Assembly (NCBI GenBank): GCA_965649765.1 | Contig: OZ287751.1 | Coordinates: forward strand, 20,026,001 to 20,090,000 | Length of the DNA: 64,000 nt | DNA from: Bispira polyomma | Lineage: Eukaryota | Direction of reading: 5' to 3' | Shown: in pieces, positions 1 to 34,167 of the stretch | How positions within the stretch are numbered: position 1 is the stretch's first letter | How the letters are laid out: each line of letters begins with the position of its first letter | Translations under genes and position numbers: made by a program | The notes under the pieces: generated by a model | The model's database searches: none | What the model saw: only the letters and a program-made list of their open reading frames with translations | Told to the model about the DNA's origin: nothing

Positions 1-2110
1 ATTATTTTTTCAAATGGTTTTCTCAGAACTGAAAAAAAAAAAAAAAAAACCTTTACCATATACGTCTTATAATAGTTAAAGTTTTTTTATAGCATTTCAG
101 TTCATTCATACAAAAAGAAAAAAGTTTTTCATAATGTTTAAGCACAATTATAAAGAAATTATAGAGTTTCTCGTATTTCAGCCAGAATTTTACCAAGCAT
201 GTTTCCACCACTCCATTTTTCAGGATTCCAGATATTGTCATCAGTAAGAGAGATCCCAGCACCCCAGTATTTATCCCTGGGATTCGCTTCGATTAAGGTC
301 TTGTTTCCTGTATTCTTGAGGTATGTTGCCAACTCAGGATTTTGAGTGAATTTACCCCGGATACCTGCTTTCATTATAGAATCACACTCCCTTTTCCATG
401 TATCAACCTTGTAATTTCTTACTTTCCTACCCAGTGCTTTCACAGTAGCAAGTTCAGTTATTCTCAAAATTTCAGAAGCTGTGACATCATCACTAAAAAG
501 CTTTGCTTTATGGTACATCAGGAACTGTTCTACAGAAGAGAAAAGCAATTCATTTTGCTTAATGGAACAACTGAAGTGATTCGACAAAATTGAATGTCTC
601 ATGAAAAAGGCGATCTTGTTTCCTTCAGAAATAGTACTCAGATTGCTTGGCCTTAATTCCTCAGGTAAGGACTCAGTCTCATCAGTTGTATAAAGTTTGC
701 CATCTAGCAAAAGTTTGTCAACAACCAATCTGGCCTTATACTTTCCTGATATCCTGTTTACAGCTTGAAGAACTGGAGTGAAAAATCGACGTCTGGTAGC
801 TATCTCAGGGGGGAAGTCTTCCACAATCTTGACACCAACATCCTGGAATTTGGACCTTTCGTAAAACATCTTTTGTCTAGCTTTGAAGCTGAGAAATTTA
901 ACAATTATTGGGCGGTCGCCATATCCATAACTTGCAACTCTGTGTGCTCTTTCGATATCTGTACTACTGATGTTAATTCCATGTTCTGCACATAATCCCA
1001 AAATAATAGCTTCGCAGTCCTCTTTTTTCACAGTGTTGCGATCTGAACGGGAATCTTTGATGTTAAGGAATTTTAAGTTATTTCTCCTTGACACAACTTC
1101 CAATGACAGCAGCTTTTCTTCCATCTTTTGGCACCTAATTTTCTGTACAGAAAGTTCACTCTGTGTGTCTATTTGTTGTTTTTCCAATGATGACACTTTT
1201 CCGTCTATGTTTATCAATTCATCCAATTTATCCGTTGTAAATTGTAGTGAAGTCTTGACATTGTCTATCTCTAGCGATATAGGATCTAAACTAGCCCGTA
1301 ATTCTTGTTTTAGAAGAGCATGTATGTTGGCCATCGTGACCTGCATGTCGAGTGAGCCCGGAGACACTACCTCAAAATCTCTTTTCAAAAGTTTAGGGGT
1401 AGATTGAGATCCATCTTGTTTACGTTGTGAGTTTTTATTTGATGATGTAGGCATTTTTGCTCTATGATGATCTTTTTGGAAACTTTTGATGAATACCACT
1501 TATGTTCTTTCTAGATTATATGTGTTTCTATAAGACTCCTGTCTAAAAGCGCTAATTTGGTCTTTCTAAATATTTATCATAAATATTCTATGGAATCACT
1601 TCTGAGTGGGTGTTTAACGAAAGGCTCAGTTTCTGTTCATGTAAATAAACACAGATAATCCTTTCAGAGTCAATAAAACTTTAAAACACTTGTTAATAAA
1701 CACAAGTTATATTTATGTAGATAGTCATAGAATAAACTTGTAAACCAAATCAATTTATAAACTCATATTCTGTTCTTGTAATAGATCTTCTATTTTGTTG
1801 TTATTCTGTATTAATTCACACTTGTAAACTATCTTCCAAATTTTCTACTTGTGGAAGGTATTTTAGCTGAAACTAATTGCTAGAAAGTAATGTCAATCTG
1901 TATCTTCTACTGTACTACCGATAGCCATGTTGTTTTCACTGCTTCATTTGTAAATAATCAGACATGGGCTTATTATTGTATCCCCAAACAAAAGTTCGGA
2001 ATGCTACAGTTAAATGGTCCTGTCACACTGCCTTCTCCTAAATTTAATTTTGGACGCGATAAGTTTAAAATAGTTTAACCTGGAGCTTTTAAATTTGGTA
2101 TGTGGCTAAA
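1..2110 (-). mobile_element. 5' part of a putative L1/Tx1-clade LINE (5'UTR ~1500-2110, ORF1, start of a T-rich spacer); any ORF2 lies left of the window
   Basis: ORF1-type protein is intronless, with an A-rich leader on the minus strand and a U-rich tract after the stop. The 5' boundary is approximate, and no TSD can be tested. Confidence 0.55.
159..1499 (-). CDS. L1/Tx1-type non-LTR retrotransposon ORF1 protein (Transposase_22-like coiled coil + RRM + CTD) fused to a C-terminal NADAR (YbiA-like) domain; likely ATG at 1454 (431 aa)
   Basis: Uninterrupted 446-codon ORF. L1 ORF1p motifs: heptad-rich aa ~55-135, LEVVSRRNNLKFLNI, DIERAHRV, RPIIVKF, IVEDFPPEIATRRR. NADAR motifs in aa ~296-446 (nt ~614-162): FF..HSILSNH, SVEQFLMYHKAKLF, KALGRKVRNY, KFTQNPEL...L..TGNKTLIEANPRDKYWG, GGNMLGKILAEIRE. 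The ATG at 1454 is in an AAAAATG context. Confidence 0.9.
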   Translation of the reverse strand: MVFIKSFQKDHHRAKMPTSSNKNSQRKQDGSQSTPKLLKRDFEVVSPGSLDMQVTMANIHALLKQELRASLDPISLEIDNVKTSLQFTTDKLDELINIDGKVSSLEKQQIDTQSELSVQKIRCQKMEEKLLSLEVVSRRNNLKFLNIKDSRSDRNTVKKEDCEAIILGLCAEHGINISSTDIERAHRVASYGYGDRPIIVKFLSFKARQKMFYERSKFQDVGVKIVEDFPPEIATRRRFFTPVLQAVNRISGKYKARLVVDKLLLDGKLYTTDETESLPEELRPSNLSTISEGNKIAFFMRHSILSNHFSCSIKQNELLFSSVEQFLMYHKAKLFSDDVTASEILRITELATVKALGRKVRNYKVDTWKRECDSIMKAGIRGKFTQNPELATYLKNTGNKTLIEANPRDKYWGAGISLTDDNIWNPEKWSGGNMLGKILAEIRETL

Positions 2111-5856: not shown

Positions 5857-6154
5857 TACAGTTGAACCCCTTTAAGATACAGTTGAACCCCTTTAAGATA
5901 CAGTTGAACCCCTTCAAGATACAGTTGAACCCCTTTAAGATACAGTTGAACCTCTTTAAGATACAGTTGAACCCCTTTAAGATACACCTTTAAGATACAG
6001 TTGAACCCCTTTAAGATACAGTTGAACCCCTTCAAGATACAGTTGAACCCCTTTAAGATACAGTTGAACCTCTTTAAGATACAGTTGAACCCCTTTAAGA
6101 TACACCTTTAAGATACAGTTGAACCCCTTTAAGATACAGTTGAACCTCTTTAAG
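5857..6154 (+). repeat. 21-bp tandem repeat (TACAGTTGAACCCCTTTAAGA) with a 118-bp higher-order unit
   Basis: 13 full-length or near-full units plus two 13-bp truncated units. The variant order A-B-A-C-A-short is repeated at 5878-5995 and 5996-6113. Confidence 0.95.
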
Positions 6155-6593
6155 TCGAACCTTAAGGGACCAGGAGAAATACCTCTGCTTAAGCAGAATT
6201 TCCACTTAACAGGGTTGATTTGAAAGAAAAGACCTTTGTGGGACTTCAAATTTGTCTCCACATAACAGGGAAAATGACTTAACAGAGTTCTACTTAACAG
6301 GGTTCGACTGTAAACCTCAAGGGACCAGGAATAATACCTCTACTTGAGCAGGATTTCTACTTAACAGGGTAGATTTAAAAAAGAAAAGGCCTTCATGGGA
6401 CTTCAAATTTGTTTCCACATAACAGGGAAAATTACTTAACTGAGTACTACTTAAAGGGGTTCGACTGTACTTAACAGTAATTCTACTCAACCAGGTAAAT
6501 TTTCATTATAAATATGGCAATGAGACCTTAAATTAACTTCTACTTAACAGGTAATTCCACTTATATAGTTCTACTTAACATGGTTTAACTGTA
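6135..6593. mobile_element. Three tandem Tigger/pogo-like MITE copies or ends
   Basis: ~157-bp direct duplication (~6155-6312, ~6313-6469), each ending GGGTTCGACTGTA; a third piece ends GGTTTAACTGTA. The same family occurs at ~45709, ~47235 and ~59455. Confidence 0.75.
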
Positions 6594-28149: not shown

Positions 28150-28957
28150 GGTTTCAATATGAAATACTTTTTAATATTTTGGATACCAATCAATATTTGC
28201 ATAAGATAAAAGTAGTTGATGCTAACCTTTACAATTTTTGTAAGCAACATCCAGATTCTATTTACCACCTTTTTACTCAGTGCACTTATGTTGACAAATT
28301 GTGGCAAAATATATTATATTGGATCTCGAATAAGTTGGAAATTTTAGTCGAATAAAATTTTAGGGTATGAAGAAATGGATGTAAATTACTGGCCACTGAA
28401 CCTTTTGCTACCAGTATCAAGGTATTACATATTTTGATCCTCAAAGACACGACTGAAGAAGTACTTTCAATTAAACATATATTTCTTTCAGAAAAATTTA
28501 AAAATATATTTTTAGAACAAAAGCTTTTGTCGAAAGTAAATCAAACTGAACAAAAATTTAACAAGAAATAGGAAGTATTGGAAAACTTCATAGTGTAAAA
28601 TGTTTTGTTGTTGTTACACCTCTGCATAAGATGACCAATGAGAAAGTAAGCATTATAAAAAGAAAATATATTAAAAATATTTTTTTTTGTGATTTGGTAA
28701 CCAGCATTGTGGTATGAGCTTTTTTTTGTACAAAATTGATTGCATTTATTAAGATGTGCCTACTGTATATTTGTACTATTTTTTATACAAAAAAAGAAAT
28801 AAAAATAAAAAATAAAATAAAAATTTAGATTGCTTACTCTAGTAATGATGGGTCAGATTGTCAACACAGTATTTAGGATGGATGTGATATACAACATTTG
28901 TATTTGAAAATGTCATACTCCATTTAGTAATGTGTGAAAGTGTATAGGTTTATAAAT

Positions 28958-33644: not shown

Positions 33645-34167
33645 CTACTGCAACTCTTCTGTCCCAGTAATCATATGTTTCCTATTATTTCCGAGTAATC
33701 CGTATCACACTATTTTAACTCTCCCATCCCAGTGATTGCCTATTATCGTTATCGTTAAATCGTTTCCTATTATTTCTGAGTAATCTGTATCACACTACTT
33801 CAACTCTCCCATCCCAGTGATTGCCTATTATCATTATCGTTAGATCATTTCCTAGTATTTCCGAGTAATCCGTATCACACTACTGAACTCTCCCATCTCA
33901 GTGATTGCCTATTATCGTTGTTGTTAGATCGTTATCTAGTATTTCTGAGAAATCCGTATCACACTACTGTAACTCTTATATCATAGTAATTGCCTATTAT
34001 TGTTATCGTTATCGTTAGATCGTTTCCTATTATTTCCGAGTAATCCATATCACACTTCTGTAACTCTCCCATCCCTGTGATTGCCTATTATCGTTATCGT
34101 TAAATCGTTTCCTATTATTTCCAATTATCCGTATCACATTATTGTAACTCTCCCATCCCAGTGATTG
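33645..34167 (+). repeat. ~85-bp tandem repeat (~6 units) inside a probable DNA-transposon remnant
   Basis: Units start at 33681, 33766, 33851, 33935, 34026 and 34111 (CCTATTATTTCCGAGTAATCCGTATCACACT...). Confidence 0.92.

What the first reader, a model, noticed from the sequence alone, without database searches (positions are those of the whole stretch)
159..1499. LINE ORF1p fused to an intact NADAR (ADP-ribose/N-glycosidase) domain
Seen in sequence: one open frame joins an L1-type ORF1p (coiled coil, SRRNNL, ERAHR, RPIIVKF, EDFP motifs; aa ~55-275) via a short linker to a full NADAR/YbiA domain (aa ~296-446). The family motif residues are retained (E324, K331, E404, D409, W412, N433, R443). 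Established: L1 ORF1p is the trimeric RNA-binding chaperone of the retrotransposition RNP. Accessory ORF1 domains I know of are PHD, CCHC knuckles and SGNH esterase. NADAR proteins include YbiA (N-glycosidase for riboflavin intermediates) and the antitoxin of DarT1, which removes ADP-ribose from guanine in ssDNA. Inference: this retroelement would load many copies of a nucleic-acid de-ADP-ribosylase onto its own RNP. I do not know of this architecture having been characterised, but cannot verify novelty without a search.
Basis: partly seen in the sequence, partly recalled or inferred. Interest (0 to 1): 0.92.

Follow-up and report, generated by a model that had tools for sequence, protein, structure and literature searches.

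The report
LINE ORF1 protein carrying NADAR enzyme
This is the first gene of a jumping element (an L1/Tx1-type LINE) whose RNA-coating protein carries an intact, strongly conserved NADAR domain, an enzyme type that strips ADP-ribose off DNA and RNA bases. The design is real and very abundant here, was mentioned once before for oyster LINEs, and has never been tested.

Summary
Observation confirmed. Window 159-1499 (-) is one open frame. The likely ATG is at 1454, giving 431 aa.

- **ORF1p half:** the N-terminal half matches human LINE-1 ORF1p by profile (E 1.5e-13) and by fold. It has a long helix, an RRM and a CTD, and a trimer is predicted.
- **NADAR half:** the C-terminal half is a YbiA-family NADAR domain (Pfam E 3.6e-40; PDB 8bau E 2e-35). 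All catalytic residues are kept.
- **It is a LINE copy:** there is a target-site duplication, a 1-kb spacer, a decayed APE-RT ORF2 just outside the window, and a poly(A) tail.
- **The fusion is not local:** the genome holds about 2,100 candidate NADAR loci in several subfamilies only 45-50% identical. More than 150 clusters of full-length fusion proteins exist in public data, with relatives in annelids.
- **Selection:** NADAR is the best conserved part of the protein. Between subfamilies dS is saturated, so it is under long-term purifying selection.

Novelty is limited. A 2025 paper (PMC12477816) notes in one sentence NADAR domains in ORF1 of Crassostrea gigas Tx1 LINEs. Other windows of this genome were flagged by this scan for the same thing.

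Function is untested. The most likely role is removal of ADP-ribose from G/C bases on the element's own RNA or cDNA. I found no RNA data and no host ADP-ribosyltransferase.

The parts
1..1838 (-). The part of one LINE insertion that lies inside the window. The 5' end is at 1838. The element runs off the window's left edge and ends at a poly(A) tail about 6.2 kb further on (locus L031 position 3821). It is about 6.7 kb without a nested 1.35-kb insertion.
   Evidence: Homology to sister copies starts at window 1838 and ends at the poly(A) tail. The flanks match as a target-site duplication: AGAAAATT exactly, or 12 of 13 bases when extended. A unique-depth unitig crosses the 1838 junction with 0 differences.
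1839..1851 (-). 5' copy of the target-site duplication. The 3' copy lies outside the window, next to the poly(A) tail.
   Evidence: the 5' flank ends ...aagtagaaaatt and the 3' end reads (A)n GAAGAAAATT.
1455..1838 (-). 5' UTR, truncated by about 192 bp relative to the longest sister copies.
   Evidence: five copies share a further 192 bp upstream. A loose end at 1838 in the unitigs reads that same extension.
159..1454 (-). ORF1, 431 aa from the ATG, with the stop at 159-161: the ORF1p-NADAR fusion protein.
1335..1454 (-). Disordered, basic N-terminal tail (aa 1-40).
   Evidence: pLDDT 41-47; poorly conserved.
1089..1334 (-). Coiled coil (aa 41-122), predicted to form a parallel trimer.
   Evidence: A single helix spans aa 41-122. 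The trimer model scores ipSAE 0.75 against a best control of 0.17, the runs agree in at least 92% of contacts, the partner's pLDDT is at least 83, and the contacts are heptad-spaced over aa 44-122.
819..1088 (-). RRM domain (aa 123-212), with the SRRNNLKF, ERAHR and RPIIVKF motifs.
   Evidence: Profile match to L1 ORF1p and to 2w7a; Foldseek matches to 2ykq and to RRMs.
660..818 (-). C-terminal domain of ORF1p (aa 213-265), with the EDFP motif.
636..659 (-). Short linker (aa 266-273).
162..635 (-). NADAR domain of the YbiA family (aa 274-431). The catalytic residues are E309, K316 and E389, with D394 and W397 (add 15 for numbering from the GTG).
   Evidence: Pfam; 8bau E 2e-35 and YbiA 2b3w E 2.8e-26; TM 0.76 and 0.75. 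Residues were mapped to 8bau E43, K50, E125, D130 and W133 using the alignment and PMC11543638.
1..158 (-). Start of the roughly 1-kb AT-rich, non-coding spacer between ORF1 and ORF2. The rest of the spacer, and ORF2, lie outside the window.

Best explanation
The frame is ORF1 of an L1-superfamily (L1/Tx1-type) LINE retrotransposon in what appears to be an annelid genome.

Shown here. Its product is a trimer-type ORF1p (coiled coil, RRM, CTD) with a complete YbiA-family NADAR domain fused to its C-terminus. The fusion is old, is shared by many LINE subfamilies and species, and is kept by purifying selection with every catalytic residue intact.

Inferred. ORF1p coats the element's own RNA in cis, so each trimer would bring three NADAR active sites onto the RNP. 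[quoted passage not shown] The most likely job is therefore to erase base ADP-ribosylation from the LINE RNA or its nascent cDNA. That would make it a counter-defence or repair activity, analogous to the orphan NADARs that phages use against DarT1.

This particular copy is a dead insertion. ORF1 is still open, ORF2 carries in-frame stops, and a nested insertion sits in the spacer.
For: Architecture. Pfam NADAR matches at E 3.6e-40. The family profile hits L1 ORF1p at 1.5e-13 and NADAR 8bau at 2e-35. The AF2 model has pLDDT 88, and Foldseek matches 8bau, YbiA and the human ORF1p trimer. The trimer model scores ipSAE 0.75 against a best control of 0.17.

LINE context. APE plus RT, with zf-RVT in one locus, follows ORF1 in four subfamilies and in two other assemblies. 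ORF2 is closest to human L1 ORF2p, with RT at 8e-39 and EN at about 1e-28, against 2e-21 or weaker for R2. The copy has a poly(A) tail and a TSD.

Selection.
- Subfamilies share only 45-49% amino-acid identity, yet all keep both domains.
- NADAR is the most conserved segment: mean identity 0.43, against 0.41 for RRM and CTD and 0.25 for the coiled coil.
- E309, W353 and E389 are 26/26; K316, D394 and W397 are 25/26.
- Between subfamilies dS is saturated, while NADAR dN is 0.35-0.43, below the 0.45-0.55 of the ORF1p core.

Scale. PF08719 has 2,147 candidates in this genome, and 150 of the 150 scored are above the cut-off. In public proteins, nearly all of the best 150 cluster representatives (all E<=1e-99) are ORF1p-sized proteins matched over most of the profile.

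Biochemistry from the literature. NADAR and YbiA members hydrolyse G-ADPr and C-ADPr on ssDNA and ssRNA (PMC12945103; PMC11543638; PMC11125620). Phages carry orphan NADARs against DarT1 (PMC11825919).
Against: - No enzymatic, expression or retrotransposition data exist. No RNA run was available.
- No nucleic-acid ADP-ribosyltransferase was found in this genome with PF03496 or PF01375. These searches are weak for intron-split genes, and the controls did not ring either.
- E. coli YbiA also acts on small riboflavin intermediates, so the substrate cannot be read from the fold.
- Pfam's own L1 ORF1 model does not reach threshold on the N-terminal half.
- Within subfamilies dN/dS is about 0.5-0.9, as expected for copies decaying after insertion. 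That figure gives no support for selection on individual copies.
Confidence: 0.45

Rival explanations
1. The NADAR domain is catalytic but works on an RNA end or an NAD-derived group rather than on ADP-ribosylated bases. Candidates are an ADP-ribose or NAD-type adduct or cap, or a by-product of RNA repair or ligation. In this reading it is part of the processing of the LINE transcript.
For: The superfamily was named for predicted links to NAD/ADP-ribose metabolism and RNA processing (PMC11543638). Invertebrate nidoviruses insert NADAR next to macrodomains, 2'-5' RNA ligase, Tpt1-like phosphotransferase and methyltransferases (PMC11848433). The authors of PMC12477816 suggest RNA processing for the TE-borne NADARs.
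Against: No such activity has been shown for any NADAR in the papers read. The only nucleic-acid activities shown are removal of G- and C-base ADPr.
Confidence: 0.25
2. The domain acts mainly as a binder of ADP-ribose or nucleic acid. It could steer the RNP to ADP-ribose-marked sites such as PARP-marked DNA nicks, or add RNA affinity. Hydrolysis would be secondary or absent.
For: The ADPr-binding residues (equivalents of K50, R79, Y84, W89, D130 and W133 of 8bau) are largely kept. Conservation alone cannot separate binding from catalysis.
Against: Both glutamates that flank the distal ribose (E309, E389) are invariant in 26 of 26 sequences across deep divergence. That is what catalysis requires, and a reader domain has less need of it.
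Confidence: 0.12
3. The domain is a YbiA-type small-molecule N-glycosidase (riboflavin-intermediate or similar damage control). The element captured it from a host or bacterial gene, and it gives the element no nucleic-acid-related benefit.
For: TIGR02464, 'riboflavin biosynthesis intermediates N-glycosidase', matches at E 3.9e-35. The domain belongs to the YbiA family by its Glu.
Against: A metabolite enzyme gives no obvious advantage to a retrotransposon. Yet the domain has been retained across many LINE lineages and species, and is conserved more strongly than the RNA-binding core.
Confidence: 0.05
4. The fusion is a chance juxtaposition, a mis-assembly, or a host gene that merely resembles a LINE protein.
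For: Pfam does not call the N-terminal half.
Against: There are hundreds of full-length copies in several diverged subfamilies. The same fusion occurs upstream of APE-RT in other assemblies. A 1,196-nt unitig from independent runs spans the junction. This copy has a TSD and a poly(A) tail.
Confidence: 0.01

Closest known systems
Tx1 (L1-Tx1) LINE families of Crassostrea gigas in Repbase, whose ORF1 proteins carry YbiA-family NADAR domains (noted in PMC12477816, Genome Biol 2025)
   Same: A LINE ORF1 protein with a YbiA-family NADAR domain, in an L1-superfamily element of a lophotrochozoan host. In both cases the function is unknown.
   Different: The host differs: it is apparently an annelid here, not an oyster. 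Tx1-clade membership of the RT is therefore not tested. The earlier record is one sentence, with no anatomy, copy numbers or selection analysis.
Human and mouse LINE-1 ORF1p (PDB 2ykp, 2yko, 2ldy, 2w7a)
   Same: The order is coiled coil, then RRM, then CTD. The profile match is E 1.5e-13 and the fold match TM 0.60-0.69. A parallel trimer is predicted. An APE-RT ORF2 follows, and the element has a poly(A) tail and a TSD.
   Different: Mammalian ORF1p ends after the CTD and has no enzyme domain. Sequence identity is only about 17-18%, and Pfam Transposase_22 does not reach threshold. The ORF1-ORF2 spacer here is 0.6-1.0 kb, which to my knowledge is far longer than in mammalian L1.
Phytophthora nicotianae NADAR (PDB 8bau) and E. 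coli YbiA (2b3w), YbiA family of the NADAR superfamily
   Same: The fold matches (TM 0.76 and 0.75). The equivalents of E43, K50 and E125 are kept, as are D130 and W133. There is a Glu, not an Asp, in the last strand. 8bau removes guanine-linked ADP-ribose.
   Different: Those are free-standing proteins, whereas this domain is the C-terminal module of a retrotransposon RNA chaperone. Identity is 24-29%. Activity here is untested.
DarT1-associated NADAR antitoxins (BC4488 family) and orphan phage NADARs that neutralise DarT1 (PMC11543638, PMC11825919)
   Same: As proposed here, a mobile genetic element carries a NADAR to undo base ADP-ribosylation of its nucleic acid.
   Different: The catalytic residue differs (Asp in DarG1, His in phage gp30.3, Glu here). 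No DarT-like gene is adjacent. The host is eukaryotic. This is an analogy of role, not family membership.
Esterase (SGNH)-containing ORF1p of CR1/L2-type LINEs, and the NADAR domain at the N-terminus of Pol in an Ectocarpus Gypsy lineage (PMC12477816)
   Same: These are other cases where a retrotransposon structural or polyprotein gene has captured an accessory enzyme domain.
   Different: The enzyme differs (esterase), or the element class and position differ (LTR element, Pol N-terminus). The esterase comparison rests on my own knowledge and was not checked here.

Membership tests
L1-type (coiled coil-RRM-CTD) ORF1p | N-terminal coiled coil that trimerises | tested here: met
   A single helix spans aa 41-122. 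The homotrimer model scores ipSAE 0.75 against a best control of 0.17, with at least 92% contact agreement between runs, partner pLDDT at least 83, and heptad-spaced in-register contacts. This is a prediction only, and the pass may reflect memory of the solved human trimer.
L1-type (coiled coil-RRM-CTD) ORF1p | RRM followed by CTD, homologous to L1 ORF1p | tested here: met
   The profile of 26 members hits 2ykp/2yko at E 1.5e-13, 2ldy at 4.9e-9 and 2w7a at 2e-5. Foldseek gives 2ykq at E 1.3e-6, TM 0.65.
L1-type (coiled coil-RRM-CTD) ORF1p | Match to Pfam Transposase_22 (PF02994) above threshold | tested here: not met
   There is no hit for this protein, or among the 25 families listed for the 26 relatives. 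The family is too diverged for that model. Homology is shown by profile and fold instead.
L1-type (coiled coil-RRM-CTD) ORF1p | Binds its own RNA in cis and acts as a nucleic-acid chaperone | not testable with these tools
   Needs biochemistry.
NADAR superfamily, YbiA family | Pfam PF08719 above the gathering score, and the YbiA fold | tested here: met
   138 bits against a cut-off of 35; TM 0.76 to 8bau and 0.75 to 2b3w.
NADAR superfamily, YbiA family | Catalytic Glu and Lys of the first core helix (8bau E43, K50), and a Glu in the last strand (E125) that defines the YbiA family | tested here: met
   These are E309, K316 and E389 (ATG numbering), aligned and mapped with PMC11543638. They are 26/26, 25/26 and 26/26 conserved.
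NADAR superfamily, YbiA family | Hydrolysis of base-linked ADP-ribose (or another N-glycosidic substrate) | not testable with these tools
   Needs an enzyme assay.
DarT1-associated NADAR antitoxin (BC4488 family) | Catalytic Asp two residues before the conserved Glu, and a neighbouring DarT1 gene | tested here: not met
   The position two residues before E389 is Leu (sequence ...TLIEAN...). The neighbours are LINE parts, not an ADP-ribosyltransferase.
L1-superfamily LINE (L1/Tx1) | ORF2 with an N-terminal APE endonuclease, RT closest to L1, and a C-terminal zinc-binding motif | tested here: met
   Exo_endo_phos and RVT_1 are found in four loci, and zf-RVT in the one RT fragment long enough to show it. 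All three domains occur in the intact 1,236-aa ORF2 of another assembly. The best PDB matches are human L1 ORF2p, with RT at 8e-39 and EN at about 1e-28.
L1-superfamily LINE (L1/Tx1) | Poly(A) tail, target-site duplication, 5' truncation | tested here: met
   poly(A), TSD of 8-13 bp; this copy lacks the first ~192 bp.
Tx1 clade specifically | RT groups with Tx1 reference elements in a phylogeny | not tested
   No reference Tx1 or L1-clade sequences (Repbase, Dfam) are reachable with these tools.
Tx1 clade specifically | Insertion into a specific repeated target, as in many Tx1 elements | tested here: not met
   The flanks of the sister copies share no sequence beyond the element ends. Not all Tx1 elements are site-specific, so this does not exclude the clade.

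The most novel reading that the evidence does not exclude
These LINEs carry NADAR as a counter-defence. Lophotrochozoan hosts, or their microbes, would ADP-ribosylate G/C bases of retroelement RNA or cDNA, for example with CARP-1/pierisin-type enzymes. The ORF1p-tethered NADAR would erase the mark in cis. That would be a eukaryotic, transposon-borne counterpart of the phage anti-DarT1 NADARs. It would also mean that many 'animal NADAR' proteins in databases are in fact LINE ORF1 products.
Probability: 0.25. Interest if true: 0.85.

Novelty: new member of a known kind. Interest (0 to 1): 0.6.

Why it matters
To my knowledge, accessory enzyme domains on LINE ORF1 proteins are rare; the SGNH esterase is the example I can name. 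The roles of eukaryotic, including animal, NADARs are called unclear by the group that defined their activity (PMC11125620).

Here a catalytically intact NADAR has been kept for a long time on the RNA-coating protein of a very successful LINE lineage, with about 2,100 candidate loci in one genome. [quoted passage not shown] It also supplies a simple test system: one domain, known substrates and known catalytic mutants.

There is a practical warning too. NADAR counts and phylogenies for animals may be inflated by transposon copies.

Tried and rejected
- **Pfam on the N-terminal half.** It gave only chance hits (DUF2316, ACT, coiled-coil families). Homology to L1 ORF1p had to come from a family profile and from the fold.
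- **Host ADP-ribosyltransferases.** Searching the genome with PF03496 and PF01375 found nothing, and the control genomes did not ring either. This is inconclusive, and I treat it as no evidence either way. I had no usable reference sequence or profile for CARP-1/pierisin.
- **Expression.** No run on record as RNA holds the stretch. The three runs laid are contigs whose element-to-flank depth ratio of about 7 fits genomic DNA.
- **Names and taxa of relatives.** Almost all database relatives are unnamed ENA or Logan proteins. Only the Atlas gave a taxon, Annelida, and that rests on very few members.
- **Donor of the NADAR domain.** A 54-row tree of the domain separates most LINE NADARs from free-standing ones. 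Support is weak, the outgroups carry no taxon labels, and several branches are long. One acquisition is compatible with the tree but not shown.
- **A third ORF or conserved element in the spacer.** None was found, with no tblastx or blastn similarity between subfamilies.
- **Survey of ORF2 intactness in the youngest subfamilies.** I cannot say whether any copy in this genome has both ORFs open.
- **Within-subfamily dN/dS (0.5-0.9).** I rejected this as a test of selection, because it mostly measures decay after insertion.
Full report
**1.

On the minus strand, window 159-1499 is one open frame of 446 codons counted from a GTG. The first ATG is at 1454, giving 431 aa.

Pfam finds a complete NADAR domain (PF08719, E 3.6e-40, 138 bits against a cut-off of 35). 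NCBIfam finds TIGR02464 at E 3.9e-35.

Pfam does not call the N-terminal half at all, even at E<10, and not in any of 26 relatives.

**2. The N-terminal half is an L1-type ORF1p**

I aligned this protein with three other subfamilies from the same genome and 22 database relatives (alignment A1). I searched the resulting profile against PDB sequences.
- Profile positions 75-227 match human LINE-1 ORF1p (2ykp/2yko, E 1.5e-13), the RRM-CTD entry 2ldy (4.9e-9) and the L1 RRM 2w7a (2e-5).
- Positions 259-422 match the Phytophthora nicotianae NADAR 8bau (2e-35) and E. coli YbiA 2b3w (2.8e-26).

An AlphaFold2 model built from A1 is confident (mean pLDDT 88). It shows these segments:

| Residues (ATG numbering) | Feature |
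|---|---|
| 1-40 | disordered tail |
| 41-122 | one long helix |
| ~126-212 | RRM-like alpha/beta unit |
| ~216-262 | small CTD |
| 274-431 | NADAR fold |

Foldseek against the PDB returns only two kinds of strong match. One is 8bau and YbiA (TM by target 0.76 and 0.75). The other is the chains of the human ORF1p trimer (TM 0.60-0.69).

A three-copy model of aa 41-270 gave ipSAE 0.75 against a best control of 0.17. The runs agreed in at least 92% of contacts, and the partner's pLDDT was at least 83. Contacts were in register and heptad-spaced from residue 44 to 122. This supports a parallel trimer. It is a prediction, and it may lean on the solved human trimer.

**3. The NADAR domain looks catalytically competent**

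PMC11543638 describes the ADP-ribose complex of 8bau and mutagenesis of E. coli C7 NADAR.
- E43 and E125 hold the distal ribose.
- K50 is essential.
- K75, R79, Y84, W89, R93, D130 and W133 line the site.
- A Glu at the E125 position defines the YbiA family. DarT1-linked antitoxins use an Asp two residues earlier, and phage NADARs use a His.

I used the HMMER alignment, and found a two-residue offset between chain and paper numbering by counting. The equivalents here are as follows.

| Residue in 8bau | Residue here | Conservation in the 26-sequence alignment |
|---|---|---|
| E43 | E309 | 26/26 |
| K50 | K316 | 25/26 |
| W89 | W353 | 26/26 |
| E125 | E389 | 26/26 |
| D130 | D394 | 25/26 |
| W133 | W397 | 25/26 |

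The K75, R79 and Y84 positions are also K, R and Y in this copy. The residue two before E389 is Leu. This is therefore a YbiA-family NADAR, not the DarT1-antitoxin type.

**4. It is a LINE, and this copy is a dead insertion**

The window ends 158 bp after the ORF1 stop, so I fetched the adjoining 10 kb (L031). I compared this copy with sister copies elsewhere in the genome.
- The insertion starts at window 1838.
- It carries a 384-bp 5' UTR that lacks about 192 bp present in five longer copies.
- The intact ORF1 follows, then a roughly 1.0-kb AT-rich spacer.
- The spacer is interrupted by a nested 1,348-bp insertion of another repeat.
- ORF2 has APE and RT domains and is broken by in-frame stops.
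- A 3' UTR with a poly(A) tail ends at L031:3821.
- The flanks repeat AGAAAATT exactly, or 12 of 13 bases when extended, which is a target-site duplication.

Without the nested insertion the copy is about 6.7 kb.

ORF2 pieces from a sister subfamily match human L1 ORF2p best. The RT matches at 8e-39, against 2e-21 or weaker for R2 proteins, and the endonuclease at about 1e-28. The element therefore belongs to the L1 superfamily. I could not test whether it falls in the Tx1 clade, because no reference elements are reachable. The sister copies do not share a specific target sequence.

**5. The fusion is neither local nor an assembly error**

- The same genome gives at least 97 scored matches out of 2,504 first-look candidates. 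Most are full length, many are open, and they range from 100% down to 39% identity.
- PF08719 alone has 2,147 candidates, and all 150 scored are above the cut-off.
- At least four subfamilies, 45-49% identical to each other, all have ORF1p-NADAR followed by APE-RT.
- Contigs of three independent sequencing runs of the same organism include a 1,196-nt piece across the whole ORF1. They also include a unique-depth piece across the 1838 junction with no differences. Element depth is about seven times flank depth, so these are DNA, not RNA.
- Two relatives in other assemblies show the same gene order, one with an intact 1,236-aa APE-RT-zf-RVT ORF2.
- An exhaustive HMMER search of 1.84 billion cluster representatives lists its best 150 hits at E<=1e-99. 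Nearly all are proteins of about 330-480 aa matched in one stretch over most of the profile. There are 6,033 hits at E<=1e-30.
- The Atlas places the nearest clusters in Eukaryota, with Annelida commonest, though on very few labelled members. Earlier follow-ups of this scan call this genome an annelid.

**6. Selection**

Copies within a subfamily differ by 1-6% and have dN/dS of about 0.5-0.9. That is expected for copies decaying after insertion, and it says little.

Between subfamilies, synonymous sites are saturated. Non-synonymous divergence is 0.35-0.43 in NADAR and 0.45-0.55 in the ORF1p core. Across the 26-sequence alignment, NADAR is the best conserved segment: 0.43 mean identity, against 0.41 for RRM and CTD and 0.25 for the coiled coil.

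The active lineages have therefore kept the enzyme domain at least as tightly as the RNA-binding core.

**7. What it probably does**

Shown: the architecture, its abundance, its conservation and its intact active site.

Established in the literature:
- NADAR-family and YbiA-family members remove ADP-ribose from guanine and cytosine in ssDNA and ssRNA (PMC12945103; PMC11125620).
- A eukaryotic NADAR (8bau) removes guanine-linked ADP-ribose (PMC11543638).
- T4-like phages use orphan NADARs against the DarT1 defence (PMC11825919).
- Guanine-N2 DNA ADP-ribosylating proteins (CARP-1) exist in clams, with homologues mainly in bivalves but also in other animals (PMC11209040; PMC12945103).

Inferred: ORF1p coats its own RNA, so each trimer would hold three NADAR sites on the RNP, where they could clear base ADP-ribosylation from the RNA template or the nascent cDNA.

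I put about 0.45 on this reading. The rivals are an RNA-end or NAD-adduct processing role (0.25), a mainly binding or targeting role (0.12), a metabolite enzyme with no nucleic-acid role (0.05) and an artefact (0.01).

Against the main reading, I found no transferase in this genome with two toxin-type ART profiles. That search was weak, and its controls were silent. There are also no expression data.

**8. Novelty**

In the paper library, the only paper that holds both 'NADAR domain' and 'transposable' is PMC12477816. It reports NADAR at the N-terminus of Pol in one Ectocarpus Gypsy lineage. It adds that ORF1 proteins of several Crassostrea gigas Tx1 LINE families in Repbase also appear to contain YbiA-family NADAR domains, with an unclear role.

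The kind is therefore on record but uncharacterised. New here are a second host phylum, the full anatomy, the scale, the selection evidence and the active-site mapping.

First readers of this scan flagged the same fusion in at least eight other windows of this genome. I treat those notes as the same family, not as independent support.

**9. Limits**

I could not check whether the youngest subfamilies, which are 99% identical with dS of 0.004-0.011, include copies with both ORFs open.
- The organism's name is withheld. 'Annelid' rests on the Atlas taxa and on other agents' notes.

Noticed in passing
window 1-158 and locus L031 (spacer); L034:3528-4169; L035:3621-4624: The spacer between ORF1 and ORF2 is unusually long (0.6-1.0 kb) and AT-rich (26-28% GC). 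It has no conserved ORF, and there is no nucleotide or tblastx similarity between subfamilies. How ORF2 is translated across it is unclear; an internal entry site or a separate promoter are possibilities.
   Followed up: partly
L031:8276-9623 (just left of the window): A 1,348-bp nested insertion of another repeat sits in this copy's spacer. The same repeat (88% identical) lies at L034:7784-8997 in the opposite orientation.
   Followed up: partly
window 1838; L002:3174: This copy and the C5 copy (L002) are 5'-truncated within 4 bp of each other, about 192 bp inside the full-length 5' end shared by five other copies. This could be coincidence, a second transcription start, or a preferred stop of reverse transcription.
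   Followed up: no
window 5857-6154 and 6158-6469: A 21-bp minisatellite (about 14 units, also scored as 42-, 76-, 97- and 118-bp periods) is followed by two copies of a 157-bp unit. The 94-aa 'ORF' at 5977-6261 with repeated KGVQLYL is just this array.
   Followed up: no
window 33677-34167: A tandem array of an 85-bp unit (5.7 copies, 84% matches).
   Followed up: no
window 28152-28449 (+): A short fragment of the C-terminal part of a related LINE ORF2 (48-50% identity to the L035 RT piece). It is probably a heavily 5'-truncated insertion.
   Followed up: no
proteins P0210 (4,240 aa), P0211, P0247, P0225, P0266: Some public proteins carry four to seven NADAR stretches in one chain. They could be fused gene models over tandem LINE copies, or real multi-NADAR proteins, for example of large RNA viruses.
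   Followed up: no
protein P0051: A 357-aa protein combines NADAR with a NUDIX domain (PF00293), another ADP-ribose-related fusion.
   Followed up: no
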